Positions 1 through 63,700 are shown, counted from the first letter of the stretch. The stretch: DNA of 64,000 nt from Fimbriosthenelais zetlandica (GCA_977030845.1 OZ365109.1:53630001-53694000), one strand, 5' to 3'. Translations and numbers: made by a program. The notes: a model not told the origin generated them from the letters alone.

Positions 1-525
1 ATAATGACTACCCTCACTAGAAACAGTGATGTTAGCCGTGGTCTTAACAGATACCTGGCCCTCATGAACCTGACTGCTTGTGGTTACAATCACTTTGCTA
101 CTATTCGAAGAATCATGCAACATAGTCCTTGGCGGCTTTTGGGGTGGATTCTGTGATGTCACTGGACTAGACTTGGATCCATTCTGCTGGTTCACGTCCT
201 TCTGTTCAGGACTTGAAGCTTTCTGTTTTTTCGATTCGCTATCAGCGGAAGATTTCTCTGGCGATTCTTCCTTAGCTGGTGGTGCACTGTTTCCAGCACT
301 ACTAAGTCTTTTTGTCGTATCAGTCAGGGGTATAAGTGGTTCCTTCCCATCTGAAACTAACTCTTGTTTCAAACCATTGAGCAGTTTTTCTTGTCGTTGT
401 TGGACATATTCCATATTTTTGGTCTCACGTAATTGTTTCTGAGCTAGCTCCAGGGATTTCTCAAACCGTAGAGTTTCAGTATTAGAAACCAACCTCTTCT
501 TCCTTTCTCTGTTACTCTCAGCATT
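1..525 (-). CDS. Core exon 13 (partial): NAESNRERKKRL...; coiled-coil end then low-complexity Ser/Pro/Lys tail, open to the window edge
   Basis: Acceptor tttatttcag at 526-527, phase 0 matching the previous exon; 175 codons with no stop. Confidence 0.87.
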
Positions 526-3500
526 CTGAAATAAATTTGCCATCATGTTCTTAATAATTTAAAATCTTAATCCGAAATCCTTCCTTTTAGACTTATTTCT
601 AACTTATCTAACTTAGAGTATCTGCATCATCAATCAAAAGGCTGAAAGGTCAATATGGGTGTCAAATATCTGCAAAAATTACTTTTAATATTCACAAAAG
701 CAGTTACAAATATCACTGAAAATTCAGCAACTTTTTTCCTTTTATAATTACCTCAAGACTTTGGACCCTAGCCTGGTGATCTGGGACCATTGCCTGAATG
801 TTTTCTAACAAGTTTCTCTTGTCTGCCGAGGCCGGTTGAGTAACCACTGGTACTGTAATTGGCTGTGGGTTCTTTTCATCTTGGACAGAGGCTAGCCTGA
901 TAACAAAACACATTGTATATTAATCCCTTCATACAGAATGATAAATTATGGAAATTCAAAGCAAGGTTGGGTAGGGTGAATAGTGATAGAATTCTTTTGT
1001 GATCTACGCATTTGTGATAAATGTAGAGAATACTGCAAGTATGCACGTGGATTACATAGAATATTTAACTGAATATATAGGCTAAAAGTGCAGGAAAGTA
1101 TGTTTACAAAGTACAATATCTTATTTGAACAGTTTGAAAGGGCACATTTCTAGGATGGCATGCATGAATCAAGAATACATCAACACTGAGGAAATCTAAA
1201 TCAATCGACTGAAAAAATAGATATAGTGGAAGAAGGAAAATATATTATTCCAACTGTTCTTTCCTTTAAAATTCGTTCAAATTTTACTTTTATTTTTTTA
1301 GCAACCATCACCGGTATGGCCAGCCACCAAAAGCATGGTTTATGGGATGTTTTTCCTCACCTCTTCAGAGTGTAAAGGGTACCCGTTAGTTTCTTGCATC
1401 GCTTTAATGAGGTATCAAGTCTCTGCGCTTCTAGTTGTATGTACCTATTAATAGTTCAATTAGCAAATATTTGCTTAGCAAATAGCTGTGACACTAATAT
1501 TTTATCCCGATTGTACCTAGCAGATTTTGCTGTGCCTTTAGAAACAAATTTCTAGACTTTTAGTGCAACATTAAGAAGTTACAGTGAGGAAAGTATGGCA
1601 AATCCAAGCATGAAGTATTAAGAAATTAAGAGTTGTTTTTGAAGCTGGTAAAACAAAAGCAAATGTCACTGATAAGTGAATAAAATGTTTAGAAGAGTCA
1701 AGGATTAGAGTATTAGACGAGTTAAAGAAATTAAACAAATTGAAAATGAAATAGACGCTAGGTATGGACAAAATAGCAAATTACAAGTCTTCAGTAACTG
1801 TTATTGCATCAACGACAATATACAAAAATATGTATACACAATCATAAAACAAGTACTATTATAGACACACTGCAATGACAATGATTTACAATTACAATAC
1901 TTGTGAGTACTTATAACAAAAACTATATTTAAATAACTCGAGTGTCTAGGACAATTACAGACAAATTCACAAGTTATATATCAAGATTATTTCATCAAGG
2001 ACTGCTGATCGATGGCTCAGTTTCAAAGGTCAGCAAAACATGTCAAAAATAATCTTGAAATTGTGGCACATTCACAATAGATAAAGCTGGTCACAATTTC
2101 CTCATCTCTCTTGGTGGTACCTGGCAGAGTAACTTAAGCCCTGTAAGCACTGTTAAATTGCAACAGAAAGAAAAATTTCTGATCCAAAGAGAAGAAGAAA
2201 AATAATTTAAAGATCTGACACCTAGCATACACCAAGGAAATTAGAGGTCCTTGTGAAACCAGCTACACACACTTCACACAGGGTGGGTTACATATGTGGT
2301 AGGTTTGAATAAATATTAATCAGTAAAAACTCACTTTTCCTCTCTGACTACCACTTCCATTTCTCCAGCCATGACTGACTTCATCTGCTCAGTGAGTAAG
2401 GGATATTTCCCTGGAAAGAGACAGGAAAGAGAGTTGACTGGACGGGAAAATCTTTTGACTGTTATCTAAATTACATCTTCAAATTGGCAAGGGATACCAA
2501 TAGAAAATCGGATCTACATGTCCATCTCTTTCTGGCTTGACTGAAAGGTGGTTTAAAAGTGCTGGCCCTAACTCAGATAGATTGACAGTTGAGAAGATAA
2601 TGTCTAGGTGACCAGATTTCATGGGCAGTAGCGATACAATGGATACAGACAGAGTATATTTGAGATCGATCCAGTTCTTATAATTGAATCTGCTTGATAC
2701 TTGAGGACAATTGGCCACTATCACAATACAATGAGCTCTAGTTCTAATTACCAGTCTATGAGTGGACATGCTGTGTGATATTATGGAACTCACCTTTGAG
2801 GTCAGCCAAAGCCTTGCTAATGTTACTAAGAGCCAAAGCCATCGACTCTACTTCTGTGTTCTGAACACGACATTTCTTGTTCAACACATCACTCCGTAAT
2901 TCTTCCACAGCTGATTCTAAGTCACTGAAAAATTAACAGACATTTTTACTGAATTGAACCGATACATTTAACAGAAGTAAAATTAGAACATACATAAGCA
3001 TTAAGAATTATTTAAGAAGGGGGTCCGATTTTAAAACATGAATGAGCGCGTCGTTTATGCAGTATTCTTCTCAAATGAAAAACCAATATGCTATACTCTA
3101 TGCATGAAAACGGTTATGGTTCACTGAAATATTTCTTTACCTCAGGCACGAAGAATAATTAGTCTTGTCTCTTGCAGAGAAGACTGATCGATTATACAAC
3201 TATTTTGCTCCAAATCACTTCAGATTGAATTGAAGTAGGCCTAGGTAGTAAAGGTAATGTATATAAAACATGCCAAACTTACACAAGATCCTGCTCAACT
3301 CTCTTGGTATCATCATTGTAGACCTTCATACTATGATCAACTCTTGCCCTTGATGCACGAACCGGAACATCTTGTGCCCCTGGAACTGTCGACAGTACCT
3401 CCTGAAAAGATAATATTGAAAGGAAAACCTGAAAACCCCATTTAATTCTATAAAATAGAGCAACATTTATTTATAAGTGTGTAGACTCTGGAATGTCCCT

Positions 3501-6500
3501 TTTGGGGTACACTGAGAAACCTTTTACATGAATGAAATAACGAAGTTCACACCAGGTGACATTCATTAGATTATCGCTGCTTATCAATCTATCAGCTAAG
3601 GCATCAAGGAAATGTTCTGGTAATTTCGTGCGGCCACTCACTTTGATTTTAAGGAAAGTTTGCTGGAACGTTTCTCTCATTGATTCTGCATTGGCTAACT
3701 GCATTCTCCTCAGATGTCGCAGTTCTGATTTCAACTCTTTCGCACGACTGTTTAGTGCCCGGATAGTATTCTGCATATCGGCAGTCATGGCGGGCTGTGG
3801 TGTTGGCGTCGCTGATGAGACATCAGACAAACCTGAAACATGCCACAGAAAAAAATAGATCACGTCAACAAAATCAACTTTTCAGCAAGGCAGTAATACC
3901 TCCAATATACCAGGCACACAATTCACATTTGGGGGAACACAAGAGTGCAGGTTATTATTGGACACAAGGAGGAGGCTAGAGTGTAGATGCGGATGCAGAA
4001 TAATAACAATCATAGCCATTATAAACATTTTTCTTCACATGTAACTTTCCAAAAATGGTCTCTCTCTATGCAGAAACATTCATAATTCAGTTAAAATAAA
4101 TTACAGAAGACGCTTATCTATCCTACGTTCGACAAATTTGATGTTGCTGTTATATATATCCCATATATATGGCAGGAAATAGGAGGAGGGAAGGATATGT
4201 TGGCTAGGGATTCCCATATTGAGATGCGTTAATTATTGAGACATGTACATTGAAGATCCTCAGCCATAGCTTAGTTTCCAGCAATAAAGGAAATGAATGT
4301 TCACCCCTCTTTCTCCCTTACCGATGGCAGGGCACTCGAGCTTAAAATTTTGATTATTTTAGTGTGCTTTTTCCCAAAAGACTTTATTAATTCTGGTGTA
4401 ATTTCATGCAATAGGGTAGGATCCACTGAGGCTAGCAGGCTGTTTAAACCAAGGATTTCCATATATAGGCCTATGCATGAACATCAATTGCAGAAAAAAT
4501 AGAAGGTAATCATTCTTAGGTCTTTATGTACGTCATTCATTGGAACAGAGTACATTAATAATCTTCTGAAACTCTTATTCGATTAAGTTAATAACTTTAC
4601 AGATTGTACAGGATGATTCATTCAATATTTATGATGGAATATAAGTCATATTAGTAAGTGAACTGGGGAGATTAATAAAATATACAGTTCTTAATTAGTT
4701 TCCTTGTCAAACAACGAACATTCACCCATTAACAAGTGCTGACATGGAAGACACCCATCTGTGCAAAACTTGCAGGTAAGACGATTGGGCAGCAATTCAT
4801 ATGGACTGAACTAAACTGATAATAACTATGTGGACTCTCATGCAAGTTTTTGTCCACAACTTTGTTTTTAACTCCTTCCACTCAGATATTCTCTGATCTG
4901 AATCAGTGTTCTAGACAATGAATCAAATGAATAATAGCTCTATTGGTTCAATCTCTGGACATTTCTGACTCTAAAAACCATCTGTTGAATAGACCTAGGA
5001 TGTTAACAAACCTGTTTGTATCTAGATTCCTCAGGCTGTTAGTGGATTAAACTACACTAAATTATCTCTATTGAAGGTTTCCGACTTGGTGATGATGCCT
5101 TGGTTCATAACACACTAAAGAGTCACAACTTACTGAAATAACGCAGATACTCAGAGGCATCTAGGTATTTTGGTGGGGTCATGGACATGCATTTAAAAAC
5201 GTAGTGGGCTGCAATGAAAACCATAAGATAACACGGAGAGGGTTCGTTTAGTCATGCTACCACACCATGTGTTGATGACGAGAATGATAGAGAATTTACT
5301 CGCTGTGTGCAAGCTGCTTTTTGGTCCAAAGCCAAGAGGAACAACCGGACCATTCCTTATAAGAATTCCTCTAAAAAGCCTAAGTAATCTGTCAAGATAT
5401 GACGACAAATTTTTGGTCTAAATATCCACAGGCCTTGGGTATTAATGAATGATTATTCTTGGGTTTTACAGGTATACAAAAATAATTATGGTTGCCTCTT
5501 GACTTCTTTCATGGAGAAAATGATAATAATTAAACCATGACTTTTTGTAAGATTTACTATGTCTCAGCAAGAGACATCATAAATCAGTGTTGCAGCACCC
5601 TATGCCATCTCTAGAAATTGCACCTCAAGTCACAAAGAAAAATCAATAAAACAATGGGAATTAACATGTGGTAAATGTCCAATATTAATTCATTGTTGGA
5701 TCTAAATTTCCACTTTAGAGGCTAAAAAACATGCAAAATTCGGATTCGGAGAAAATCTATCTCAAAGGGGGACTGTGCTTGGAAAAAACAGAACTAAACT
5801 GATTTTTTTTGGAAAAACTGAACTTGAGGAGCAATATTCCCGGCCAATTGATGCACAGATGCGTTCAAAATAGGGGGAGTATTGCTGGACACTGCAGCTG
5901 AACGATGGCTAGAAGAGGACAAAAAGTGGGGGGAAGGCAAATGAGCAGCTTAATGGAGCAGGGCAAAAATGGAGAGGTGCAAAAATATGATTATGAGAGG
6001 CAGACAACACAACGGATGGGAGATGGAGGAGCGCGAGAGGTTCTGTCTTTCTCCGCTATGGGGCACTGACTACATGCTGTGTGGTATATTCCCAGTACCT
6101 GTGATAGGGGGCGTAGAAGGAGACTGGACGGGTGTAGCATTCTCACTCTCTGAAAACAAACGGCAGCTAAGGTTAATGGCCTTCAAAAGGAAGCTCAGCC
6201 CGGAGAAAGCTGTTGAAATAGGTGGCCATACATCCACAAAGTTTATTGTTCATCATAAGCAAAAGTCCAGTCTTGCAAAATCTTTTTGAATTTTAAAATT
6301 ACGCCTATGGACTTGTGGTGATTATTTTGGGGGTTTTAAATGTATTCTTGCCATTGTATTGAATCCAAAATTTATTTCCCCGCATTTAAATTTGGATATG
6401 TTGGATATTATGTCTATTTTTAATATAGGTCTTTTACTTTTTTGGTGGAGATGGGTTCATCTAAGTTCTTATCTACTGTGGAATGCATGTCATATTATGT

Positions 6501-9500
6501 GCACCCTAAACTATCAAAATACAACTAAGAAAAATCTAAAATAGTAGCTCTAAACTTCTATTATTTGGGATTGTTTCTTGGAACGACTATGATATCTACG
6601 AAGCCTCTGATCTTTCCTACTAGCAGGAATGCTACAGGAGGACACGAAGGTAAATGGAAATGAGTCGATGTGTAAGTGATGTCGAGAAACTAACATTTAT
6701 ATGAATGCTTAACATCAGTAACATATGTGGGACTGAGGACTATCTTTTCTCTCTTCCTTACTATATATGCCTCTAGACCGTATAATACAAATTGCAATCA
6801 TATGATGTGCCTCTTGAAAATATGTGTTCTGTAATTATTTCAACATTGACACTTCCCACAATACTGCACTCAATACGTTCAAGCCTTACAATTATCCAAT
6901 ACCAACTTTTAAAATCACATCAGACATTCTTTAGCCAACAATTAACCTATTGTCTTAATTATGTAACAAGTTAGTATAATAATGTCCTTAGAACCATGCC
7001 CAGTCAAAGTTTTCTTCACAATGGTGTTAGTTTTTGAGTTCCCAACATCAGGATCAAATCCAAAACTATGCAGAACTGTAATCGCCATGCTTGATTGGCT
7101 TATAGGTTGGATTACTACACACATTGTATACCTCTATTACCCTGCAGCCTTTCCAAGGATATTATGCAATCACTGCATGTTTTCTTCATACGCGCAAGTC
7201 CTAATTTACAGAGAGAAATGGCACCTACATTAGAATGAACAAAGGAGCACTAGACCGGTGGGAGTAACATTGGATCCATCCATACTACTGGGGACTGACT
7301 GGCGAGGATAACAAGAGTTGCCACTATCAGACTGAATATCTATATACATTATCTATATGTCCATGATGTTAAGAAACTACATGTATTGACTTAAGTTGGT
7401 CAAGGAAAATGTAATATTTTCCTAATCTGATAATGACATACCGGTACATATAATTATGTTATCTCCGCTCCCCGCCCCGACCCCAAAAGAAAAGTGAATA
7501 ATTATGCGGTAATTCAATCTCCATTGTGGATGGGTGAAGGAACATTGGTTCTTCATCATGGATGGGTCATTTTGACAGTTTCCATCCTCTGACCTATATC
7601 GGTCATCCAGGTTCTGCCCAGAACAATATCCAACAAAGGAGAAAACTGCTGAAACTGCGTGTCTGATGGCACTATAGATCAGCTAAACACCCAAATTCCC
7701 AGATAAATACCAAGTGGCAACTCTAAAAGGCAAGAAAAACAGGAGAATCTGAAGCCTGGGGAGCTCTGTATGCTAGAGTCGATCTATTGTGAGGAGGGAA
7801 TGACGGCTGCAGGGTAGGGAGAGGTGAGTTGGCGGTCTGGCCATGTTGGTTGTTTAAAGCATTTCAATATGATTATGGCACTTGTACAGTAGATACCTGG
7901 CTGAGCAAACTGGGGAGGAGCGGGCACTTCCAAATGGACTGTAGCAAATGTAAATGTACACATTGGACAGTGGTTATAACTTAGAACTAAAACCATGGAA
8001 TAAATTACAAATAGGCCTACTTCATCCTCACCAAAAATATATCCAACGAAAAATATGTAAGCCTAAGTTTTAAATTCATTGTAAATTATCTGCATTATTA
8101 ATTCAAAATTAAAACATTGTTTTCATTAAAGAAAAAATGATGACAAAAAAAATTCAACAAGTTCCTGATATTGCCCAATTGGGAAAAAATCCTCAAAAAT
8201 GTTTATATTCAAGAAAAGATGGAAACAATATTTTATATTAAAAACCTATGTTATGATCTAAGGATGGTGATGCCTTTCAGTCATGATCTTCAAGACAACC
8301 TCAACCTACTTTTAAAATTAAAATCTTTTCTTAAAAATTAAATGTTACACATTAAAACATTATATTTCATACGGGGAGGGGTTTGAGAAGTACAACGATG
8401 GAAATATTCATTACTTTAAAAACAATTATCACTTGTTCTTTGGGGTCACTACATCGGAATACAGAAAGAAGTTAATAGAAAAAATCTTTAATCGGACATA
8501 ATTTGACAAGGTAATTAACCAAAATACATTGTAGGTGGTTTGGAAGATACAGGCTAATGGAGAAAATGGAAATGACAAAACTTACAACGAAACTGTAATG
8601 CATTTCCTAATGCTATATAGTACATATCTCACGGTCCATTAACAGGCACAATGATGTAGATCTATTACATTGTCGTATATAAATGCAGAACATGTCCATT
8701 CTTCTAGAAATAATTCAATACAAGCCGAACTAGCTGAGATTAGGATAAAGGCTATATTTTCATGGTTATTTTGATGATAAAAGTTGCAATAAAGATAGGA
8801 GATACTGACTGCTTTTGGCTGATGTGTCTGAAGTGAGGCTAGCATTGCTTCTCGCACTGCCCGGCCGACTTCCTCCTGGCTCCCTCTGTACCACAGCGGT
8901 CTGTACCCATGCTGCAAGATTCGCCAACTGTGCTTCCATTTTATCCATACGATTTCTGCTAAAAAATGGATTTACCAAGTTACGATTGGGGGCCTAATCG
9001 TTGATAATCGATCAATTGGATGATTTTGAAATGAGCCTGGTATTTCTTGATGATCTAATTCTTATCACCATTTCCATCAATTTATTTTCTACTATCAAAC
9101 AAAAATACTTCGATAATAAAATCATGTGCATACATTTTACCGATTCAGAGGAATCTGCACTTTCAATAACTTATTATTTGAAACATTCTCCTGAGAACAG
9201 AGCCTATCAGTGTGGCCTACTTGGCTGAGATTTCTGATGTTGTATTGTAAATGGTCACTGTGCTGTGAGCTGTGCAGGGCCACTTACACCCGAAACCCCA
9301 TAGGAAATCTTTTACCGAATTGGGTCGTTGTTAAATTACTGTGGTTTTTAGCTATTACAAAATTAAAAAATATGATACAGTTGTGTAAAGAATACTCACG
9401 AAGCTTCCTGATCACTAGCTGTTGGAGTGGCACTTCCTGACCGGGACGAGCCTTCGTAGTAATCGTGGTAACTACGGCTTTGTGGTAGGCGTGAATCGGG

Positions 9501-12500
9501 AGGGAATCCGGCCCCTCCTTCTGGTATGTAAGCCACCGAGTGGCGCTGATTGGGGATAATTCCCACTGAAAGAGGAAGAAAAAACATCTTATAAATTGTC
9601 AAAATATTCGAGAAATACTTCTTTTTACTTATAAATTCTAAACATTTGCTCATCATACAATCATATCATAATGACAAGGGAGGATAGGCCTACATGGTTC
9701 TTCTACATGTTCATTGGACCATTTTCTTGACGTACATTGGTTGGCCCATCAATTGCTTACGGGTAATTGATAAGTCGGACTGATCAACGTAGGTCATAAG
9801 GTTGAAATGGTCCAGAGGACATGTCATTAACGTACAAAAACAGAATGCATATTATTTTTAGATAAGCTACTGCAGTCAGTGCCCTTAGAGAAGATAGCAT
9901 TGACCCTTTCAATGGAATGAGTAAAATTGACTGTTGATCGAAGACTGTGATCTGTATCGACAAATTCAGGAACATTATAACGCTACAGTCATAACATTAT
10001 AAGTTTATTTAAAGGTGTGAAAATTGACCATTAGTAAGAACATCTTATAATATAGAGGATGTCTATTGTATGTATAGAAAAGACAATGAGGTTAATACTT
10101 GGGAAATGGGATTAGGGGAATGGGATAAAGGAGAAACTAACTTCTTGCTACAAAAAAAACTGTTGTGTATAATCATGGACAAAAATATGGCAAAACCTCA
10201 GATGGGAAATATGTACAAGACTGTAAAATGAATGTTCATGGAGCGAAGCCACCGTTACCAAGAACAAATGGATGATCTGTTGAAAAGTAGGAAAATGATT
10301 TTAACTCCCAACACCATTATCACAACACCAGCACCACTAATATTACAGAAAATCCAAAAAGGTTATGTTTACATTTAAAAGTATAAGTCAAAACACTTAA
10401 ATGAAACCAGGCACTAAACTATCCTACTGTCCAACTCTTGTTCTAATACTTATTATTAGCAATCTTCAAAGTCTGGTTGATTCAAAATTCCTAATTTTAA
10501 ACGAGAATTCAAAGTTTGATATTGCTGAAATTAACATGGAAAAGAAGACAAAAAAGATCTTTACATAATTGTCCATCAACTTTAGGTTAAATTTACAGGA
10601 ACTGTATTTATTGAGTTTTATTTGGCCACGTGGAGCAAAAAAGCAAAAAAGACCACATATTTAAATGCAATCTTGATGCAAAAAACAGGGACATCTGACG
10701 AGAAATATTCACATATGTTCAGCTCACAACTTTTGAGCAATCATTTCTATGAACAGTAGGGCATCATGTGAAAAGTTATATGTCCATTATTCTCTTAGGC
10801 CTATATGGAATTCCAATATTGAATTGTTCGCCATTTTTAGAATGTAAAATGTGAAGCCCCTTGTCCACCAAGCTGCATTCTTGACATACATTAGATCCAC
10901 CTGTCAACTGCCCTGCAAGCAATTGACAGGTCCACCGACGTAAGTCAACAAAACGGTCCAGTGGACATAGGGCTTATACCGGCCAGTGAAGGGCAAATGG
11001 CAATCTTCCAGCTTTGAAGATCTTCCTACTGTAAAGATAGAGATACAAGACATTGTGACCTTGTCATTATCTGAGGTCACACACACATGACACTGTTACT
11101 CACTGTGCGCCGCCGCAGCCAGGGGGCCTCCCCTGGACGGTGACCCCGGTGGGGGATATATGACGTCACGGTTGATGACGTAAGCATGATGGGTAGGAGA
11201 ATCTATTGAACAGGGTAACACAGGACAAACATGACTGATACTGTTGTTGACCATACCAGAGACTCAGAGATGAGGGGTCGAGAAGCACCATGTACGTTAT
11301 ACAAGCGTCCTTATATGAAGGACGAGACTAATATCATGAGACCTGGCCTAAAAGTTGGTCACCTATACTACTCACTGTACCGTAGCCTACCTGACAGCAC
11401 AATAAATCAGCTTCTTTAACAAAAATTTGGAAGACTTCAGTATGGGGAATTCAGCAGTGGAAGATCCTGTGTCTTCCAAAATAAATTATACCTTAGCTTA
11501 TTTTGCAAAACCTTATATAAAGAATTTTTAAAAATGTGCAAAAGCAGTTTGGGGTGTCATGGCCATTTTAGGGACATCAAAAGACTAGAATTCTATCAAA
11601 CAAACGTGATAGAAATCTATTTTTTGAATTAGGGGTTGATATATTTTTCAGATCAAAATAAAGCATTGGGCAAACAATCGCCATCAGGTAGAGCTGAAGC
11701 ATCCCATTATAACCTTATGTAGACAAAGCAATCTATAAAGGTTATAATCATTTCAACACCGTAAAGTTCTATATGTAAAACCCACCCCCATAGAGATGAA
11801 CCCATTGCCCAATAGGATATTTGAATGTATAAAATAACCAAAATATTTGGGGAAAATATGCAGCAGATATTTAAAGTGTCAACATTGGTGAAGTTTAAGC
11901 GACATATTTAAAAGCGATGTTTGTCAGTTTTATACAAGAAAGTATGCAAGTGAATGTAATTGATGAATATAAGGAATGACAACAATGCAACTAATAGGCG
12001 TATAGTGTCAACATAAACATCAAAGGTAGACAGAGATATAGTATAAGCTGTATGAGAATGCCACTAAAGCCAAGGTTAACTCAGTGTATATTTGCAAAGA
12101 ACTGAGTTTTTGAGTATTAAGAGTTCTAAACCACTACAGACAAGTTCAGAAGGTTAGCACTTTTAAGTCATTTATATCTTCAGAACAGGGTTAGCACAGA
12201 CGGCACTGCATGGATAGATAGAGTGGAAAGGTGCACACAAACACAGATCCGGACTTATCCCATATGTTTCAGAGTCCTAGCCTGTTTCTTTTCTGTACGG
12301 ATTTGAATCTGAGTAATTTTGGTGAAGTTAACTTCTTATCTAAAATGAAGATTTCAGCCTAAGTATTGGTTGCTGTACATATTATGGTGTGGTATACGCC
12401 ACAATCTCTCACTACTAGACCTCAATTATCATTTGTACTCTTTTCAGTAAGCCATTTTGTACCATTCTCCATTCTTGAAAGAGGTAGAAGATAGATGTCC

Positions 12501-18500: not shown

Positions 18501-21500
18501 TTCCAAGATGAACAAAGATCTTTGAAATGTTATGAATATTTCAACAACGTCAACGGCAGAATGTAATTTTCCAAGAACATAACATTTTCAAAGCTAGCAA
18601 CACTGAAGTAATCTCTGCATAGAGACATCAAATGGAATCTAGAGGAATCATTGTAGGAACCAATCTGTGGAAGAAATCAGTAAAAAGAGACTAACGGTGG
18701 AAAATAGTCGATAGTAATCAAAGAAGGGAAATGCCAGGACGTGTCTCTATGCCGACAGAGTCCTCAGTCCACAAGCATTGAGCTCAACGTGTCGCCAGCA
18801 ATCAATTAACTATGGATCCCACTGCCTTTGATGGGGTGCTTACTTAATCTCAATAACTGGCATAATGGAAATCACAAGTTGTAATTAGCGTTCAGCGACA
18901 TGGGTCTTTACTCTTTAGGGGACATTGCCGGGGTAGTGATGGAGGTATTGTATTGATTCTATTGTGCTCCGATCAGCATGGGATGGATTTGGCGGAGCAC
19001 CGGTCCAACACTCTTAAAAAGGTTCTTATTAGATGTTATTTTAGGGAACTCAGAGATATTTGCAGAGCCAAAGCAATGCTGGGAAGGGTTCTCTCGTTCT
19101 CTCCGCAATATGAGTGACATTTGTGCCTACGCTACGCTCTGCATACATCATTTAGGTGACAGAGAAGGAAAGAGAGAAGTAGAGTGGGAGAGAGAGAGAG
19201 GGAAGGAGCTATGCGGGGGAAGGTATAGAGAGATACAGGAATATACTGTCCATATATTACTTACCTGATCGAAATTTCTGGGAGGAGCTGAGGTGTGGTG
19301 GGCGGGGGAGTGGGGGCCGGAGCCATCCTGTCCTCCGCCACTATAATACACACCTTGTGCCCGGACAGTCTTAGGACTGCGAGAGGGACTCCGGACTGAT
19401 GGAGCTTCCGTCTCATAGATCTTGAGGACCGCTCGATCCTTCACATCTCTGCAAAGAAAGGAGAATACACATTATATATCAAAGAAACATTATCACATAG
19501 CGCCTTGTATTTATAAAAGAACTTATATTTATGAAAGAAAATTACTGTGTTGGAATGAACAGTTAAGGCATCCAAGTCATATAAAGAATTTTCTCATTGA
19601 GGAATGCAAATGGTAAAACATTATGTTAACTGGGCCAGATGTACGTTAGTCGTGCGACAAGAACAACCCACAAGCCCACAAGCAATAGATAGACGGACCT
19701 GACATTAGCCAAGAAAACAGCCAGTGAATTGCCTGAAACAATTGATGGACCGACCTGACATACGTCTAGAAAACAGCCCAGTGGCCATGACTCTTTACTG
19801 TGAAGGCTATAAGTAGGAGCTTGTATACTTTGGATGTATGGCCCAATTTTCACAAGGCCCAATTTGCCACGGTCTTGCCACGGTGGCCATGGTCCTGTTT
19901 CCCTACATGTCGCGGCCATTTACTAGACCCAATTATCTCTCTGCTTCGTGAACAACACGGCCTTGCAGGGAGCATTAGCCCGGGTCAATACATGATACAG
20001 CATTATATCGATCATTATAATAAGACACTTTGGTTTGAGACTAATATCCCTAAACCAGCAGGATGTAGCCGGGCATCTGGAGGACCTTAATCTCTCCCTT
20101 CCCTCCTTCCTCCAGTACTGCCCTCCCTGCTGCCACCAATATCAGGACCCCAACTTCATAGCCGGTCAATAGATTGATTTTACTTCCTTGGTGTCCGCCA
20201 AAAAGGGTCCCATCGACTGGTGAGGAGGGTCAAGAACGGAGGGCGCAATATGACACTTGGAATGCCCTTGTGATGCCCTTCTGGCTAACTCTTCACGCCC
20301 TCAGCCCACCGCACACTCCGGAATATCACAGGAGCCCACTTTCGGGACTTCCTGAGAGGGTCAAAGGCATGTGTGTGGTGGGAACACTTTCTGGATTCTC
20401 ATTTAGCACTATATCTTTGGTGATATATGGAGAAGGATATAACACAAGGGCACTGGTTTTCAGTTATTTTACACAAGTAAAAACTAATGCAAGAAATAGT
20501 GCAAGAACAAATGTCATCTTTTTCTTAAGGGACAAATATAATCTCTTTCTTAAGGGTTCTCATACTTAGGGTTCTTACCCTATTAGATTTATGCTTCATG
20601 GAGCCTTTCATTTCTTTAATCGAAGTGATTGACATAGTTCATGTCTTCTTGAAGCCTGGACTAAAGAACATAAAAACTCAAGCTGTGAAGTGAGGCGTAG
20701 ATCCAATCAAATTATGGTTCCATGAGGTGACTGGGTGCAGAGTGTAAAAGCTCGTTACAGTAATATTCAGTCGCCTTTTCGTCCCTACACAGTTCATGGT
20801 GAGTGGATATTCATGGCAGAGGTCCAAAATGGACTAGTCCATGTCCATATTCCACAGCAGCTAGCAGAGGGCTAATTCCAAGTCCCTATCACGTCTAGTG
20901 GTTCAAGAATAAAATCCCACTGCCTCACTCTCCACTACCATTAAACCCCAGGAAAAATAAATCAGGCACATCTTTCATCTGGAAATCTGGAAGGCTTCAG
21001 AAGGATAGCTAAATGGCCCCGTAGCTTCTGCCAAATCCATTTGGCATCAAATATTCGAAGCAGGGGGATGATAGATTGTTCCCGGTGGGAAAAAGATGTG
21101 AAATAAACCTGCCTTAATTGTTTGGACATATCTCTTGGAATCCATGAGGGATGAAGTTATATAGAGACCGGCCGAGTGAGAGAGACCTTTTTTCATTCGG
21201 TAATTGCAGTGAGTGCTGTCAAGAGTCAGTCTAGCCAATGACAAGCCTATTCTGTGAAGAGTGGCTACTAATTAAGTTGGAACTAAAATGAATGGTTTGG
21301 GCTAGAATACCTTGATCACTATGGATGCTATAGAGCCTAGGACACTAATGGCTCAGAGGTGTGCTTTCGAATAAAATTAATAAAATAGTCAAGGCCATTC
21401 TCTGGCCGTTTTAGAATCTCTCAGTGAAAACTAAAGGTGTCTGAGGTCTTTACAAAGATTATTATATGAACTGGGGTCTCATTTGACCATCAAGACTATA

Positions 21501-24500
21501 TATATAGCTTAATACTTCATCCAGGGTTCATTCAACTACAAGCAGATTTTAATTACATGTCCTCAAACCAGGAAGAAGGGGGCGAGCAATTATGAAGCTA
21601 TTTACAAGAAGAAGGCAATCGATGGTGATTGATGTACTCACCACGGAGTAGTTATGACTCACCCAGAGCGGTTTAATGATGATAGTTTGAGGTTACTTCA
21701 CATTTTACTGATTATTAGGTAATAAAGCCTGGATAGGCCTGGGTATTATGGATTGAAAGGACACGGCTGAAGCAGTATATTCTTATAAGAATAATAAGTA
21801 TTGTAATATCTCAAACCAGCAAACCGTTTTTCTGACCAGATTTATTTTTACCAAGCGGGGATCATAAGCAACCATTACGCTGGACTGGAGTGAAAGTAAC
21901 AAAGTGTAACTAAAAACAGAAAAATGGAATGGGAGTGGAAATTCCTATCAGGTTAGAAGTGAAAATGATAATTAGTTAGTGAATAAATACTGAGAAGTCT
22001 ATCATTTAGACTAGAATGGTTTCTTTCAACATTTCTACTCAATTCCCATGAAACTAGATAACAATGATGGCAACCTGAGCAAGCGTCCATATTGCCGTGG
22101 TGATGATCGGTTACAATGGACTCCAATAACATGCCCCTTTTAGACTCATTGGCCGAGTCCTAATAGTCAAATCTCAGCATAAATAGGGTACGATTTAGAT
22201 ATTTTCCAGCAACATTTGCCTGCAAATTAGCACATTACCAATCTAATTCACAGCAAGGTACTGCGAGGCGCATTGCAAGAAGAATGCCGACTAATAGAAG
22301 AATACTAGCGTGACATTCATCATGGAGAAAGTGCTTTAAAACAAAACCAGAATAATTGCCATAATCTTTCCTAATTACACGGGGGACCATTTGGCCATTT
22401 TCCCCATGAGACTCATGTCTGTAGTCGACTGCAGAGCCATTCATTTTGCAATAATTTGAAGGGCTTTTGACAAAATGTGAAAACTTGCTTCAATGGAGCA
22501 ATGATAATAGTGACATGCCTCAGCGCTGGCTTGGGTCTATGCTGGGACCTTTAAGATACCAGAACATATTGTTTGTCTCCCCACGCGGAAGCATCTTAAT
22601 AAGCAGTATTGAAAGCAGCAGCCTAGCAGTGTGTGTATTTTCAATGGCCTTCTTCATAAATAACCCTAGCGTGTATGATGGAAATTCAACCAAATCTCTG
22701 GCAATAGAAAGAGCAACAAAGCATTGTTACTCCCATTCCACTATGCCATATTTTAATCAGCAAGACGTGTGGTCCCACCACGGTTAAACTAATAAACTAT
22801 ATACTGTATGACACATAATATGAACCGATGGAAGCATCTAACGAGCATTTCTTAGCAAGACGCCTCGCAAAACACCTTTTTGGGAGTGGAATGATGATCA
22901 ATTGCCAGGAATGATTTCCTCTCAAAAAAAGGCCAGTCACCTAGAATAAATTCGGCTGATATATCATATATCATATCTACCACGGCTTGACACAAACTCA
23001 TGTGTCATTTGAGATCCAAAAAAGAGGGCATCAGACAGAGGGTGGAACGTGGGTGGAGAGAAAGCAATCGATAGAGATATAAATTGAATGATAAACAAGG
23101 ATAGGCCTGTCAGGAGCAGTGAGATAAGACTCTTATAGGAGTGTGACCATGGGCAATACATAGATTTAATACTTGCAAACCCAGTCTATCACCAATATCT
23201 CTCCATCTGTCATCATCCATCATATAATACCGAATATACACAAGAATTAAAAAGATTAAAGGCTCACAGGGCTCGAAAAGAGAGTGTCTGGACTATGCCA
23301 AAATACCAATATTTAGATAATTACCAATAATATATGTAGAAAATAGACCCACAAGACTACCATACCATACCATTCAGCGATACTATTTTTTCTACCATCA
23401 CAATAAATAATATCTTATATCCCATGTCTTTAATAATTGTCTTAGTTATATTCTCACATTTTAATTATTACAGTTGTATTACTGTGTCAGATAATTAATT
23501 CCAATGTATTTTTCAGGACATCTTATAGGTCTAAGATGATAATAAAAGGCAATGGCTCATTAACCTTACCTTCGATAATAGGCTATTTTCGGTAACATTT
23601 GGTCTCGCCCTGGTCTTGCTTTGTAGACGTACAGCCTGTTCAGCTCATCCATGGTTGTGGATTGCTTGTGGATATCAGTGTAATGTATTCCAAATCAGAG
23701 CAACTGATAGCCCTATATGCATGGCTAGATCCAAGCCCATTGATATAAGCCTAAAGATATCTGAATGATGTCCCACTACCCGAAGCCAAACAGATAATTA
23801 TACATGATCAATTAGAACCAAATTACTTATTCAGATTCCCTAACATACCATTAATTGATAGAAATATAATTCAATTAATTGCTTTTCAATTAATGATGGG
23901 GCAAGTCCGAAGCAATGGTTTAGTCATTGTCCATTCTGGCTAACAAGCAAAAAAGAAAAATGTCCCCTTATGTCCGTACATATATACAAATGTAACAACC
24001 ATATAGCTTTGGCAACAGCATAAATAAATGACACTCCCTTGATAGGTCCCTCTCAACAACCAAGAACAAGGGCCTTCTAGCGACAAGCATATAAGCCTTT
24101 CTGCAATTAGTGTCCTCTACTCCTCTTACAAGTGTCTTTTGCCTTTGGATTGTACTCTATATCAGACATCATAGTCCCAGGAGGCAACTGCCTTCTTTAG
24201 CCCTAGGTTTGACTAATAAGTATAAGCCAGATTTTGGGGACCGAAATCTTCCAAATAGTCATATGCAAATGCTCTTAAATGACAAACTCCTGGGGGTTTC
24301 CTGCAGTATTGTCACAAAATATGCAATAATAATGTCCGGAGTGTCTCCTGGTCCGACGGGATGTCCTTTACTGAAGCCCTTGTCTTGTTCGTACAGCAAT
24401 ATTATATAGCAAGTCTTTTTACTTTTTTTTCTAGCAGGCAGCATATAAGGGAATCCCTACAGTGGTTGATGGGAGAGGAGGGAAGACGCAGAAATGTCCT

Positions 24501-53675: not shown

Positions 53676-53685
53676 CGATTTCCTC
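53676..53685 (-). CDS. Candidate 10-nt microexon GAGGAAATCG, (R)RKS
   Basis: ctttttcag|GAGGAAATCG|gtaaga; converts phase 2 (exon 60741-60793) to phase 0 (exon 42490). Confidence 0.62.
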
Positions 53686-55530: not shown

Positions 55531-55559
55531 GGGTGGGTGGGTGGGGGTAGGGGGCGGGG
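55531..55559 (+). other. G-quadruplex motif GGGTGGGTGGGTGGGGGTAGGGGGCGGGG
   Basis: Six G-runs with 1-2 nt loops. Confidence 0.65.
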
Positions 55560-57002: not shown

Positions 57003-57027
57003 TTACTAATGATATCTTCATTAGTAA
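57003..57027. repeat. Perfect 10-bp inverted repeat ttactaatga-(5 nt)-tcattagtaa
   Basis: Direct read. Confidence 0.6.
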
Positions 57028-60000: not shown

Positions 60001-60391
60001 GGTCATGTCTGGTTCACCGGGCTAGACATAGAGAACACAACCACAAAAAATACAAAAACAAAAAACTGCGATACAGGTAACACGGTCCGAATTAAGCCGC
60101 ATGGATGATATATCAGTTTCCCTGTTTGCATTGGCAAATACACTAGGGGGTCGATTATGTATATTTGTGGAGAAACATTATTGGGTGAACTTCAGCTGCA
60201 TTTGCTCAGTATAGGACAATGCAAAGTCAATATTGATACGCTCTTATTAAACCCGGCAGTGTGTACACATATTTGTATGGGGAAACTATATTAGATGTGG
60301 CTTGTAGCAAAGTGTTGGGAAATATGTGAATACTTCAGAATAGGGGGAGAGAAGGCATGACAGTTATTTAGGAAGTCCTATGAGATGCTAG

Positions 60392-60405
60392 GTTGCTATG
60401 GTTAC
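60392..60405. promoter_or_regulatory. RFX X-box GTTGCTATGGTTAC (GTAACCATAGCAAC on minus)
   Basis: Consensus match on the minus strand, about 340 nt into the intron after the MGGCIS exon. Confidence 0.5.
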
Positions 60406-60740
60406 GTGATATTTGCCATAACACGTCTTTGGTCTCCATGCCAACGGTTTATATCCCCGTCAAATCTCAGTCTGGTTCCATGGATTATTTAGAAACTAAA
60501 TCAAATGAAAGATATGAAAGGAAACAGGCTTGAAAGGAAACAGAGATTGGTTCATAACAATATAATTGTAATGGCAAGAATGACCTATTCCATTTAAATA
60601 GATAAAACAAAATTGTAGCATTTTTATGAATCTGTTCCACTAAATACTGCATGTAGAACCCCTCTCACATAGTTATGAAGCCTATTTCAGGATAGACCCT
60701 TTGTTATGAGTGAACTACATTCCTTCGGGTAAGCCATTAC

Positions 60741-60775
60741 CTCAATCGCAGATCAAAGGAAATGCATCCACCCAT
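60741..60775 (-). CDS. Candidate initiating coding segment MGGCISFDLRL(R), inside exon 60793-60741
   Basis: Long pyrimidine tract tttatctcttcttgcctttcatctcatctcgttttcactcctggcag, ttcATGG start, donor gag|gtaatg in phase 2; MGxxxS myristoylation consensus with Cys4. Confidence 0.6.
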
Positions 60776-63700
60776 GAACCCCAGCCCTGAAGCCTGCCAG
60801 GAGTGAAAACGAGATGAGATGAAAGGCAAGAAGAGATAAACCACAGGTAGGCCAGGGATATGCTGGTACTGAATCCAGCATTGTAATGCCTAATGAGGCA
60901 AGGATATACCAGCATAATTATGGTATTCTGTAGTCATTAAGGGGTATGATCCAGTTATTAAAAGGATCAATATTAACCCGGCAAACTAAGCCTATAGGGG
61001 TTATAATACAAGCCTATGGGATCTGTTACAACAAGGAAGCGCTGCTAATTGGGTCTTAGTTGCAGTTCCCTATTGTTAACATATCAAAGTCAGTGAGAGG
61101 CATAATTCGATCACTGAGGTGGATATATGGACACAATACAATATTCTATATAGGCTTACAGCTTTCTTCATAATCAGTTTAATCTTGGGACTTTTGTACC
61201 TTTTCATGAACACAGACTTGGGGGATCTGCAATGCATTACTGCCTGAGATTGCACCACTTCAATCACTAGATAGATTCCTCTAATTTTGTATCAAAAAGT
61301 GTTATTTTCCCCTCTACAATGGATGGAGATGAATGTGGATTAATGGAGAAGGATTAGGAGAGATCACATTAGTTAGATTGCATTAGATTCATCTCAGTCA
61401 TAGACAATTGGCCTAGGGGATGTAGGGGTGAGGAAGGGGGAATGGGAGGGGGATGTTGGCCTACAGAGTAGAGGGAAATGGGAGACATGTCCTTCGCTTT
61501 GCCTGGGGAGCAGACCTGTTATCACAGGACCCTGGATTGGAGGAGAGGGGAAAAGTGGGGAATGGGAACAGGGAACGGAGAGAGAGATGGGGAGAAAGGG
61601 CTTGGTGAACTGGATGAATTAGGCTGGTTGACAAGGAAGGACATACTCACACAGTAGTGAGTGATATGTTTTATTCATGCTTTATATCCAGGCATTGAGG
61701 AACAAAGCCAGGATGAGGGAAATATGGGAACACCCGTTATGAAAGTCTATGAATGAACTTATCTCCAGTTGTACGCGAATTAATGGAGATAATGGATGAA
61801 GAATACTGCATGTATTTTACTGTGAAGTTATGAATCAATAGGCAGCGTGTATTGTTCTATAGTGCCCTGGGATGAGATGTCCTCAAATGACATACAATAA
61901 TTATGATTTATTGTCAGTATTTCTCCATATGGAAATATTCAGGAATAAATTCCAGCAATATTTGGAATGGCAGCTAATGAAAAGAGTGCTTGGATAAGAG
62001 AATGATTATAATGATCAAATAAATTTGAATAGAATCACATTTTTCAATTTATGGAGGAAATTAAAGATAATTCATGAAGAATGATCGACTGAGGCAATGT
62101 ATTAATATGAAGAATTTCCTCCATTTCCCTGAATATTATTCTGAAATTTACATCTTCTAGGCAAAATAGAAATGTATTTAATGTAATGCATTATTCAGCG
62201 TGTACTTTTCTTATACCAACTAGCAATAGCAGTACACAGATCAGCCATCAGGGGCGTCAAATTATGCATACAAACCTCAGATACGCTGGAATGCACTTTC
62301 AATGTTAATCATATTCATGAATTAGTTTAATGGAATCTCAATGGCATGTTTGTTGAAGCCGGCATGTAAACAAACTCGAGTGCAGAGGATGATTTTATGT
62401 TAATGAGGGTTATCCATCATGTCACGACCTGCCTTCAGCAGCGAGGTTATCCAGAACTGGGTCAAGGTGCTTAGCAATGGGGAAAAGCAAGGTCATATAG
62501 AGGAGCCATTATTGGCAGCAATGGCTGGCAATCTCTGCAGTGCAATCGATGTTAATAACCCACAAAAAAAGCTACAAAAACAGAGATTCCTGTCTAAAAA
62601 CAGAAGTGAAGTTGACAGAGGTATTGGCCTGTGCCTGCCACATTTCTCCACTTTCAGATAATTCAATTCGGAGTTATGCAGCAAGGCCTTTGTTTGCTGA
62701 GCCTTGCTCTTCACAACAGGAGGTTGGCAGTGTTTTTGTCTGATATCATGCGCGTTAACAATGCCCCCTTTGACAATGGGGTCGCTTGGAGAGGGTGTCT
62801 GGCTTGCCCCAAGGGAATGGCCTAATTTGGGAAGCCCCGGGGGTGCTGTGATATTCCCCGTTTCCTCCCCCACTTTTCCCCCTTCCCTCGCGCGTTTCCC
62901 CTGTGGTAATTTTCTGTCATCGTGATTAATATGCTAGGAGTCAGTAGGATCGGGCATGGAGAGTACACCAGGGTCAGTGAGTGCAAATGTGTTACTGCAA
63001 AAAGAAATGCACTGAAATATTAATGTTATGTGGACAGCAGAAGTGTTGTTGATTTCCTGGCTACTCAAATATTTGGTCCCCTGATATGGACATTAAGTGG
63101 ACGCACTTGTTCTGTGCACAGTGAAAAGCTTACGGTCAATTCACTTAATGTGTTGTTTGCACAAAAGAGATTTAATTGTAACCGAATCAGCCAGACCATA
63201 TTTTCAGTGGATCCTTAATATATTCGCTTCAGTGGGCATCATGAAACATATTATGAAGGGGACACGATCAGCATGCAGTATATAGTATAGTATAACCTGT
63301 TATAATACTGTAATAAGGCACATAGCGAGGCAGGGATAAGAGCAGTAAACGCCTGCCCTGTCTAAGATATTCATGTTCCTAATACCTTTAGATACACAGA
63401 TCTCATCAAAGCAGCCGCACAAATAAAAACTGAAATAAATCCACATCAGAAGACTAATTTGTATGCAATGGATGACAAAGACAACTTTAGCGGACATATA
63501 AAACCAAGAAAAAAATGTTAGTTTGTGCCTGTGAGGTACAAATTGTGCTCTGTGATTCTAGTAGGTGGATGGTATGTGACTGGCATAGAGACGGGGCTGG
63601 GTTTGCCCAGGCGCCTAATGTATCATAATCTAGTTAGCCCGTCCTATTTGTTGACCGTGTCTGGTCCTTTTCCCCCCACAGGCCTGTGTACATTTCACAC

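What the first reader, a model, noticed from the sequence alone, without database searches (positions are those of the whole stretch)
1..60793. One scaffold gene with a ladder of phase-matched alternative starts that swap N-terminal membrane anchors
Seen: four candidate starts in different long introns (60775, 37010, 23652, and the junction AUG at 11104/9565). Each has a plausible start context and a donor whose phase fits the next usable exon (2 via the microexon, 1, 2, 1). Established: MGxxxS is the N-myristoylation consensus, Cys clusters beside basic residues are S-palmitoylation sites, and SRCIN1/p140Cap is a Src/Csk-binding actin scaffold. Inference: promoter choice would give a myristoyl+palmitoyl+polybasic full-length form, a palmitoyl-only form, a form lacking most of the AIP3-like domain, and a short coiled-coil-only form. 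This would be a modular targeting/dominant-negative system. I do not know whether it has been described for this lineage.
Basis: partly seen in the sequence, partly recalled or inferred. Interest (0 to 1): 0.82.

Follow-up and report, generated by a model that had tools for sequence, protein, structure and literature searches.

The report
Mostly chance starts; one missed exon

Summary
The window holds most of a minus-strand gene of the SRCIN1/KIAA1217 (p140Cap/SKT) family.

The pattern itself is not evidence. A start codon in good context, an open frame and a donor in the right phase occur 1-6 times per intron. Random sequence of the same composition gives the same rate.

- **23652:** absent from the one close relative I could read.
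- **60775:** reaches the next exon only through an ad hoc 10-base microexon and has no other support.
- **11104/9565 ("junction AUG"):** the ordinary mRNA forms the same junction codon. The junction Met is absent from the two relatives read there, and the CRE site is near chance level.
- **37010 (MCLLGCCCGCCRKRR):** too unusual in composition to dismiss. It recalls a conserved Cys-Cys/polybasic first exon in two other species, but homology is unproven.
it matches a first coding exon conserved in two other genomes and resembles the start of a foreign transcript that skips the upstream exon.

No RNA data could be obtained.

The parts
42322..42490 (-). Real coding exon E_a (..GGFLRGGRLRSSLPVVRSPNKTLEKPL, then G split across the junction). 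Acceptor in phase 0, donor TAG|GTAAGT in phase 1.
   Evidence: Homologous ORFs P0040, P0063, P0064 and P0067. tblastn matches to L004, L005 and L009.
31644..31842 (-). Real coding exon E_b, the start of the AIP3-like domain (LVFLIHRNETKRALLPNEVTSIDTVRALFVRSFP...YYELEDLK). Phase 1 in, phase 2 out.
   Evidence: Pfam PF03915 at E 6e-7. Dozens of homologues. Splice sites.
19265..19449 (-). Real coding exon E_c (DVKDRAVLKIYETEAPS...). Phase 2 in, phase 0 out.
   Evidence: 86% nucleotide identity to relative contig L002.
12794..12989 (-). Real Tyr-rich coding exon (AKAASLPAQSNFIYQQEMAQYGTSAQYAG...). Its donor AGA|GTGAGT is in phase 1 and its last base is A, so the canonical mRNA also forms the junction codon A|TG with exon 9565.
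   Evidence: Matches the L013 ORF.
9400..9565 (-). Real coding exon ((M)GIIPNQRHSVAYIPEGG...SRSYHDYYEGSSRSGSATPTASDQEA), phase 1 in.
   Evidence: Homologue P0068.
1..8961 (-). Downstream coding exons covering the coiled-coil and C-terminal Pro-rich part. Approximate match limits: 8961-8817, 3836-3642, 3431-3282, 2929-2759, 2411-2358, 1446-1360, 916-752, and 558-1. The last exon runs off the window.
   Evidence: tblastn with the spliced contigs P0071 and L013. Relative contig L001. Family alignment A4.
32990..33041 (-). It reads MGRHRRYSWFGCTSNLR, then G split across the junction: 52 nt, context cacaATGg, donor GAG|GTTAGT, phase 1 into E_b.
   Evidence: Found in the blind candidate list. It matches the conserved exons L005:9597-9660 and L011:1179-1239 and resembles the L013 transcript start. 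The motifs WF[DEG]C and TGGTTTGRMTGT occur only in these exons across about 300 kb read in six frames. It ranks 2nd of 3,527 six-frame fragments by HMM.
33300..34000 (.). GC- and CpG-enriched block just upstream of altB: GC up to 0.54, 14-17 CpG per 400 nt, with CCCCGCCCC and CACGTG motifs. Candidate internal promoter.
   Evidence: Inference only.
36935..37010 (-). 76 nt, in-frame TGA 6 nt upstream, donor GAG|GTAAAT, phase 1 into E_b. Plausible but unverified alternative first exon.
   Evidence: Compositional outlier. Resembles L005:4219-4302 and L009:2172-2231, but an HMM of those exons does not rank it.
60741..60775 (-). Unsupported candidate.
   Evidence: Cannot join E_a (phase 0) directly. 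No CpG/GC signal. No homologue in L004 or L005.
53676..53685 (-). The same donor also closes a chance ORF that starts at ATG 53699 (MNFFRRKS, phase 0).
23570..23652 (-). Not conserved.
   Evidence: No match in the 5.9 kb upstream of E_c in relative contig L002.
11104..11183 (-).
   Evidence: One full CRE found against 0.41 expected. Site pair p about 0.06. CpG count at the 95th percentile.

Best explanation
The window carries most of a long-intron, minus-strand gene of the SRCIN1/KIAA1217 (p140Cap/SKT) scaffold family.

The 'ladder' as described is mostly what chance produces in about 60 kb of intron. Starts 60775, 23652 and 11104 are probably not used.

What is likely real is narrower. The intron between exon E_a (RSSLPVVRSPNK motif) and exon E_b (start of the AIP3-like domain) holds internal promoter(s). 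Their short first coding exons splice in phase 1 straight onto E_b. Everything upstream is replaced by a 17-25-residue basic peptide.

- **33041-32990 (MGRHRRYSWFGCTSNLR):**
- **37010 (Cys string):** a plausible second one.

Shown here: sequence anatomy, chance rates, and conservation in other species. Inferred: promoter activity, use of these exons in this species, any lipid modification, and any membrane targeting.
For: **Gene identity and exon map:**

**Chance rate of phase-matched start/donor pairs:** the same as in simulation.

**23652:** absent from relative contig L002. There the real exon is 86% identical and two non-coding blocks are also detected.

**altB in other species:**
- L005:9597-9660 and L011:1179-1239 are conserved while the surrounding intron does not align.
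- They differ by 6 synonymous changes, 4 conservative changes and an in-frame 3-nt indel.
- Both start at an ATG and end at a phase-1 donor.
- The fully spliced metatranscriptome contig L013 opens with MATKKRRRWSFFDHRTQ joined to E_b, without E_a.

**altB in the window:**
- The window exon is one of only four phase-1 candidate donors in that intron.
- It carries the RR..WF.C motif and TGGTTTGRMTGT, which are otherwise unique to these exons in about 300 kb.
- It ranks 2nd of 3,527 fragments by HMM, and a GC/CpG-rich block lies just upstream.

**37010:** it has 6 Cys plus 4 basic residues. The looser criterion (3 or more Cys plus 3 or more basic) gives 0.32 hits per 64 kb in simulation, and nothing comparable occurs in 300 kb.

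**Cys-Cys/polybasic first exon in relatives:** the orthologues in L005 and L009 have a conserved MVLxGGCCG-polybasic first coding exon in phase 0 before E_a.

**Precedent:** mouse Skt/Etl4 uses several promoters (PMC4683868).
Against: - No RNA evidence for this species: no sequencing run was listed.
- The window altB match is not significant by sequence score alone (HMM E about 1). It rests on combined position, phase and motif arguments made after the motif was seen.
- L013 has 17 upstream ATGs in its 690-nt leader. Its 5' part could be unspliced RNA.
- The gutless-oligochaete orthologues show no conserved block in their roughly 1-kb E_a-E_b intron.
- Homology of 37010 to the L005/L009 first exon is unproven. 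The tblastn E of 0.006 was obtained without composition correction, and an HMM does not rank it. Part of the Cys run sits on TGC/TTG-rich simple sequence.
- The donor weight matrix was a generic one built from my own knowledge, not trained on this species.
Confidence: 0.5

Rival explanations
1. Four promoters give four in-frame N-termini: a myristoyl+palmitoyl form via the microexon, a palmitoyl-only form, an AIP3-truncated form, and a coiled-coil-only form. Together they act as a modular targeting and dominant-negative system.
For: - All four ORF/donor/phase combinations exist.
- MGGCIS fits the N-myristoylation pattern.
- The 23652 exon has an excellent start context and donor.
- The 11.0-11.3 kb region is GC/CpG-rich and has a CRE pair.
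- The mouse paralogue has several promoters and shorter transcripts (PMC4683868).
Against: - Chance gives the same density of such candidates.
- 23652 is absent from the relative.
- 60775 needs an ad hoc 10-nt microexon, lies in unremarkable sequence and has no homologue in L004 or L005.
- The junction ATG also exists in the canonical mRNA, and the junction Met is absent from L013 and P0068.
- A single CRE is expected in 37% of shuffles.
Confidence: 0.06
2. None of the intronic starts is used, including 37010 and 33041. The gene has one promoter upstream of E_a, possibly beyond the window's end. The similarities to other species' short exons are coincidence between short, basic, low-complexity peptides.
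For: - HMM scores for the window matches are at chance level on their own.
- L013 may be partly unspliced.
- There is no RNA data.
- Clitellate orthologues show no conserved intronic exon.
- No first exon for E_a could be identified inside the window.
Against: - The 33041 ORF combines right strand, right intron, right phase, the same 52-nt length as in L013 and a motif unique in 300 kb. The joint chance is roughly 0.002 or less.
- The L005/L011 exon is clearly under coding constraint.
- The composition of 37010 is far outside the simulated range.
Confidence: 0.25
3. Only the 33041 exon is real. The Cys string at 37010 is simple TGC/TTG-rich intron DNA that happens to be open in the Cys frame.
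For: - The DNA under the Cys run is low-complexity (TTGC/TGC units).
- The HMM of the L005/L009 first exon does not find it.
- CpG content there is only at the 79th percentile.
- No relative could be read at that position.
Against: - The run is followed by non-repetitive RKRRP, starts at an ATG with G at -3 and an in-frame stop 6 nt upstream, and ends 10 codons later at a good phase-1 donor.
- L005 has an MCLL... phase-1 ORF at the equivalent place.
- Relatives carry a CCG-polybasic first exon.
Confidence: 0.19

Closest known systems
Mouse Skt/Etl4 (KIAA1217), the vertebrate paralogue of SRCIN1
   Same: It is the same protein family. It is also a very long gene with large introns, and it has several tissue-specific transcripts attributed to different promoters, including shorter ones (PMC4683868).
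   Different: The mouse promoters were inferred from Northern blots, RT-PCR and lacZ knock-ins. No swap of lipid anchors was described there. Here nothing is shown at the RNA level, and the alternative exons are tiny first coding exons placed directly before the AIP3-domain exon.
Mammalian p140Cap/SRCIN1 N-terminus
   Same: p140Cap is a scaffold that binds Src and Csk. It is drawn with an N-terminal myristoylation site (PMC7904710), and Srcin1 appears in a palmitoyl-proteome list (PMC8230572).
   Different: The candidate myristoylated start here (60775) cannot be tied to the gene. The EPLYA/EGLYA Csk-binding motifs were not found in the window's Tyr-rich exon. The relatives' N-terminus is Cys-Cys/polybasic rather than MG-type.
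N-terminal Cys-cluster plus basic palmitoylation anchors such as GAP-43 (MLCCMRRTKQV) and PSD-95 (MDCLCIVTTKKYR)
   Same: Per my own knowledge, these are Cys clusters within the first dozen or so residues, followed by basic residues. MCLLGCCCGCCRKRR (window) and MVLVGGCCGAKPRK (L005) have that form.
   Different: The resemblance is one of motif type only. There is no homology, and no modification was tested.

Membership tests
SRCIN1/KIAA1217 (p140Cap/SKT) scaffold family | AIP3-like N-terminal domain (Pfam PF03915) | tested here: met
   The exon at 31.8 kb hits PF03915 positions 1-59 at E 6e-7 and 29.3 bits. That is below the whole-protein cut-off of 31.6 because only one exon was scored. Homologous ORFs carry a precomputed PF03915 assignment, and one is named 'SRC kinase signaling inhibitor 1' by JGI.
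SRCIN1/KIAA1217 (p140Cap/SKT) scaffold family | Coiled-coil middle region and Pro-rich C-terminal region in the family order | tested here: met
   Exons at 8.9, 3.8, 3.4, 2.9, 2.4, 1.4, 0.9 and 0.5 kb align in order with the spliced contigs P0071 and L013. The last-exon family alignment shows KKVPPPPPPRK, KKxPPPPPVRKTS and a terminal EETEI[YF]. Most of that exon lies outside the window.
SRCIN1/KIAA1217 (p140Cap/SKT) scaffold family | EPLYA/EGLYA-type tyrosine motifs that bind Csk (PMC7904710) | tested here: inconclusive
Exon 12989-12794 is Tyr-rich (NFIYQQEMAQYGTSAQYAG) but holds no EPLYA or EGLYA.
Alternative first exon / internal promoter | ATG-initiated exon with a donor whose phase fits the next constitutive exon | tested here: met
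   This is met for 37010, 23652, 11104 and 33041. It is met for 60775 only through the microexon. The feature does not discriminate: chance gives the same rate.
Alternative first exon / internal promoter | Conservation of the exon in related genomes while the flanking intron has diverged | tested here: inconclusive
   - 23652: not met.
- 33041: met by motif, position and phase against L005, L011 and L013, but weak by score.
- 37010: only a resemblance.
- 60775: no homologue upstream of E_a in the more distant L004 and L005; no close relative could be read there.
- 11104: no relative DNA obtained.
Alternative first exon / internal promoter | Transcripts that start at the exon and join it to the core exons | not testable with these tools
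   No run was listed for this genome, so read laying could not be used. The only transcript evidence is the foreign contig L013.
N-myristoylated proteins (pattern G-{EDRKHPFYW}-x(2)-[STAGCN]-{P} after Met1, from my own knowledge of PROSITE PS00008) | The pattern fits at residues 2-7 | tested here: met
   MGGCISF (60775) fits. MGRHRRY (33041) does not, because R follows G. A fit says nothing about whether the exon is used. By a rough estimate of mine (not simulated), an MG..C..S-type start is expected about 0.6 times per strand of a 64-kb window.
CREB-driven promoter | Palindromic CRE TGACGTCA close to a TATA-like element and a start site | tested here: inconclusive
   There is one full CRE at 11161-11168 against 0.41 expected, and 37% of shuffles have at least one. 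A second ACGTCA lies 13 nt away; such a pair has p about 0.06. Function and conservation were not testable.

The most novel reading that the evidence does not exclude
Invertebrate SRCIN1/SKT-family genes may carry a small array of alternative first coding exons, each encoding a different short membrane-binding peptide.

- A Cys-Cys/polybasic exon before E_a in some species.
- A Cys-string exon (37010) and a basic RR..WF.C exon (33041) before the AIP3 exon in this one.

On this reading, promoter choice decides both whether the conserved RSSLPVVRSPNK segment is included and how a scaffold of the Src/Csk-binding SRCIN1 family is attached to membranes.
Probability: 0.2. Interest if true: 0.5.

Novelty: new member of a known kind. 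Interest (0 to 1): 0.3.

Why it matters
If the two E_a-E_b intron exons are used, this scaffold would be made in forms that differ in two ways: whether they keep the conserved RSSLPVVRSPNK segment, and which short basic or Cys-rich peptide heads them. That would give a simple, testable handle on where the scaffold sits in the cell. It would also show that the multi-promoter layout known from mouse Skt/Etl4 is old.

The practical lesson for the scan is more general. 'Start codon plus in-phase donor' in long introns is not evidence by itself, because it occurs at chance rate.

Tried and rejected
- **RNA evidence.** Two run searches (exon only, kind rna; 4 kb, kind any) listed nothing, so read laying was unusable.
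- **Full-length annotated homologues, to read their N-termini.** The exhaustive search with the last exon returned only ORF-type fragments. The length limits of the word-based search kept long annotated proteins out of reach, and a family-profile search returned 13 fragments.
- **Pooling unrelated exon ORFs into one 'alignment'.** This found handles in relatives. It yielded the close relative's E_c contig but not its E_a, E_b or 9565 contigs.
- **The best relative contig for E_a** (531 kb, ENA) and one Logan contig had no DNA available.
- **Paralvinella locus L004.** Its GenBank models split the gene, and the 1259-aa model starts at an exon inside the E_a-E_b intron with no similarity to ours. 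I treated this as an annotation artefact.
- **Vertebrate-type N-terminal motifs upstream of E_a:** none found.
- **An exon-1-like ORF at 52712 (MVLAAGC...):** it ranks 2nd by HMM but has no usable donor, so I rejected it as an exon.
- **L005 MCLLDYVCSS... ORF:** suggestive, but it has an in-frame upstream ATG and I could not check its conservation.
- **Other checks.** tRNA and Rfam scans, Pfam on CpG-rich ORFs, and self-similarity of the candidate regions all gave nothing.

Full report
**Observation**

The gene lies on the minus strand.

| Candidate | Coordinates | Length | Peptide or sequence | Donor | Phase |
|---|---|---|---|---|---|
| Start 1 | 60775-60741 | 35 nt | MGGCISFDLRL.. | GAG\|GTAATG | 2 |
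| Microexon | 53685-53676 | 10 nt | cag\|GAGGAAATCG\|gtaaga | TCG\|GTAAGA | brings start 1 to phase 0 |
| Start 2 | 37010-36935 | 76 nt | MCLLGCCCGCCRKRRPVTVEYTKAR | GAG\|GTAAAT | 1 |
| Start 3 | 23652-23570 | 83 nt | MDELNRLYVYKARPGRDQMLPKIAYYR | AAG\|GTAAGG | 2 |
| Start 4 | ends at 11104 | – | exon ends in A; with acceptor 9565 this makes A\|TG | ACA\|GTGAGT | 1 |

**Gene and exon map**

The exon at 31.8 kb hits Pfam AIP3. Homologous ORFs from many animals carry the same domain, and one is named SRC kinase signaling inhibitor 1.

By eye, and by alignment to relatives and to two spliced foreign contigs (P0071, L013), the core exons are as follows:
- E_a, 42490-42322: phase 0 in, phase 1 out.
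- E_b, 31842-31644: phase 1 in, phase 2 out.
- E_c, 19449-19265: phase 2 in, phase 0 out.
- 12989-12794: phase 0 in, phase 1 out.
- 9565-9400: phase 1 in.
- About eight further exons run down to a large last exon that leaves the window.

No exon that could feed E_a in phase 0 was identified inside the window. The true 5' end may lie beyond base 64000.

**Is the ladder more than chance?**

I counted donors with a simple weight-matrix score of 6.5 bits or more that close an open frame from an ATG with a purine at -3, in the phase each intron needs.

| Intron | Observed | Mean in 200 Markov-1 simulations |
|---|---|---|
| Upstream of E_a | 6 | 5.5 |
| E_a to E_b | 4 | 2.0 |
| E_b to E_c | 3 | 2.6 |
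| E_c to 12989 | 3 | 1.5 |
| 12989 to 9565 | 1 | 0.56 |

The probability of at least one candidate per intron is 0.40-0.99. A phase-matched start per intron is what random sequence gives. The weight matrix is a generic one built from my own knowledge, so the numbers are approximate. Observed and simulated sequences were scored in the same way.

**RNA evidence**

None could be had.

**Comparison with a close relative**

ORF handles led to contigs of a related species (Logan ERR14368249 and ERR14368245). Their exons are about 80-86% identical to the window and their introns do not align. That makes conserved exons easy to see.

Contig L002 covers E_c plus 5.9 kb upstream. E_c and two short non-coding blocks are conserved. 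Nothing matches the 23652 exon, which lies 4.2 kb upstream of E_c in the window, even in very permissive searches. Start 3 is therefore not conserved. I could not obtain this relative's contigs for the other candidates.

**Start 1 (60775)**

- It is in phase 2, while E_a accepts phase 0. The 10-nt microexon is needed only to mend this.
- The same donor (53676) also closes a chance ORF from ATG 53699 (MNFFRRKS, phase 0).
- The surrounding sequence has no GC or CpG enrichment: it sits at the 37th percentile, whereas real exons sit at the 92nd-99th.
- No homologue was seen upstream of E_a in two other species.
- MGGCIS fits the myristoylation pattern. By rough estimate, such a start is expected about 0.6 times per strand in a window of this size.

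**Start 4 (11104/9565)**

- The canonical upstream exon (12989-12794) also ends in A in phase 1. The ordinary mRNA therefore carries the same junction Met, and the 'junction-created AUG' is not special to the proposed promoter.
- That Met is absent at this position in the spliced contig L013 (..ALGSSQRHSVAY) and in P0068.
- One full CRE occurs in the window against 0.41 expected, and 37% of shuffles have at least one.
- The pair of half-sites within 30 nt has p of about 0.06.
- The region is GC/CpG-rich, at the 95th percentile, so some regulatory role cannot be excluded. The case is weak.

**Start 2 (37010)**

- This peptide is a real outlier: 6 Cys in residues 2-11 followed by RKRR.
- A looser criterion (3 or more Cys plus 3 or more basic residues) gives only 0.32 hits per 64 kb in simulation. 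Nothing comparable occurs in about 300 kb of fetched loci.
- It has an in-frame stop 6 nt upstream of the ATG and a good phase-1 donor.
- tblastn with it found, in locus L005 from another species, the ORF MVLVGGCCGAKPRKTIAGVKQKKAKKRK (E 0.006, no composition correction).
- That ORF proved to be a genuine first coding exon:
  - It is conserved in a second species (L009: MVLAGGCCGSRPRYTSRVKK).
  - It has a good start context and a perfect AAG|GTGAGT donor in both species.
  - It is in phase 0 in both, despite a 24-nt length difference.
  - It lies 1.0-1.6 kb upstream of an E_a whose acceptor is in phase 0.

So relatives do head this protein with a Cys-Cys/polybasic peptide. That exon, however, precedes E_a, whereas 37010 follows E_a and is in phase 1. 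An HMM of the two exons does not rank 37010 among the window's top fragments. Homology is unproven.

L005 also has an MCLLDYVCSSPESKEPEQ phase-1 ORF at the equivalent intron position. It has an in-frame upstream ATG, and I could not check its conservation. I rate 37010 as plausible, at about 0.4-0.5.

A scan of JGI metagenome contigs with the E_b profile gave 39 loci.

- **L013 is a spliced transcript.**
  - E_b is followed directly by E_c and by all later exons, in a 921-aa ORF.
  - The ORF opens with MATKKRRRWSFFDHRTQ joined to the G of GLVFL, and E_a is absent.
- **In L005 and L011, two related genomes, a block 470-700 nt upstream of E_b is conserved while the intron around it is not**.
  - The block is exactly an ATG-initiated ORF that ends at a phase-1 donor: MVKGGSNTLGRRTWFDCGSKE in L005 and MVKGTNTLGRKTWFECGGKE in L011.
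  - The two differ by 6 synonymous changes, 4 conservative changes and one in-frame indel.
- **The window's blind candidate list for the E_a-E_b intron has four donors.**
  - One closes ATG 33041-32990, MGRHRRYSWFGCTSNLR: 52 nt as in L013, phase 1, donor GAG|GTTAGT.
  - It shares RR..WF.C and the DNA string TGGTTTGRMTGT with the L005 and L011 exons.
  - Across about 300 kb in six frames, these motifs occur only in these exons.
- **An HMM of the foreign peptides ranks this ORF 2nd of 3,527 six-frame fragments**.
  - E is about 1, so the score alone is not significant.
  - Because only four fragments were eligible beforehand, the coincidence has p of roughly 0.002.
- **A GC/CpG-rich block with GC-box and E-box motifs lies 300-1000 nt upstream**.

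Caveats:
- The motif was defined after seeing the sequences.
- L013's 690-nt leader has 17 ATGs and may be partly unspliced.
- Clitellate orthologues show no conserved block in their short E_a-E_b intron.

I rate this exon at about 0.7.

**How it most likely works**

Shown: sequence anatomy, chance rates, and conservation in other species.

Inferred: one or two promoters inside the E_a-E_b intron make mRNAs whose first coding exon splices in phase 1 to the AIP3-domain exon. The product lacks everything upstream, including the conserved RSSLPVVRSPNK segment. It begins instead with a short basic peptide, with a Cys cluster in the 37010 form. Such peptides commonly bind acidic membranes and, when Cys-rich, are palmitoylated (my own knowledge, for example GAP-43 and PSD-95). 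Nothing here tests that.

**What is known**

- Mouse Skt/Etl4 (KIAA1217) has several tissue-specific transcripts attributed to different promoters (PMC4683868).
- p140Cap is drawn with N-terminal myristoylation (PMC7904710).
- Srcin1 appears in a palmitoyl-proteome list (PMC8230572).

Multi-promoter use and N-terminal lipidation are thus known for the family. The specific Cys-Cys/polybasic and RR..WF.C first exons of invertebrate members were not found in the papers searched, and that search was not exhaustive.

**Verdict**

Novelty is modest.

Noticed in passing
window 20144-20309 and 18800-18887: Two non-coding blocks flank exon E_c and are conserved with the relative contig L002 (74% and 81% identity) while the rest of the intron does not align. 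They have stop codons in all frames, and the second carries TAATTA/TAATTG motifs. They are probably enhancers.
   Followed up: partly
window 25800-26500: A CpG-island-like patch inside the E_b-E_c intron has CpG observed/expected of 1.0-1.2 against a window mean of 0.46. It has no Pfam hit on its ORFs, no repeat copy in the window, and no match in L002. Unexplained.
   Followed up: partly
window 52637-52712 (minus strand): The ORF MVLAAGCRPLLGF... starts like the conserved first exon of L005/L009 (MVLAGGCCG). By my own count, 17 of its first 21 nt match, and it ranks 2nd of 3,527 fragments by HMM. It has no usable donor before its stop. It may be a decayed first exon, or it may be chance.
   Followed up: partly
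The 'microexon' donor therefore has a second, equally unverified reading as a first exon that feeds E_a.
   Followed up: no
window 12794 / 9565: The canonical exon 12989-12794 ends in A in phase 1, so the normal mRNA also has a Met codon split across this junction (..HPIPQ-M-GIIPNQRHSV).
   Followed up: yes
L005:11828-11960: In another species, an ATG ORF MLACETLCCKPRRRPEQ... (Cys plus polybasic) runs in frame through the acceptor into exon E_c. It may be chance: three other hits of this strength were found in 300 kb, against about 1.5 expected.
   Followed up: no
P0001 and alignment A4 (last exon, mostly outside the window): The family's last exon ends in a conserved EETEI[YF] and carries two PPPPPP-R-K/R motifs. 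The terminal motif looks like a PDZ-type ligand. It was not examined further.
   Followed up: no
L004:10001-20729 (Paralvinella palmiformis, GCA_025642065.1): The public annotation splits the orthologue into an 85-aa model (the E_a region) and a 1259-aa AIP3 model. The longer model's first exon lies inside the E_a-E_b intron.
   Followed up: partly
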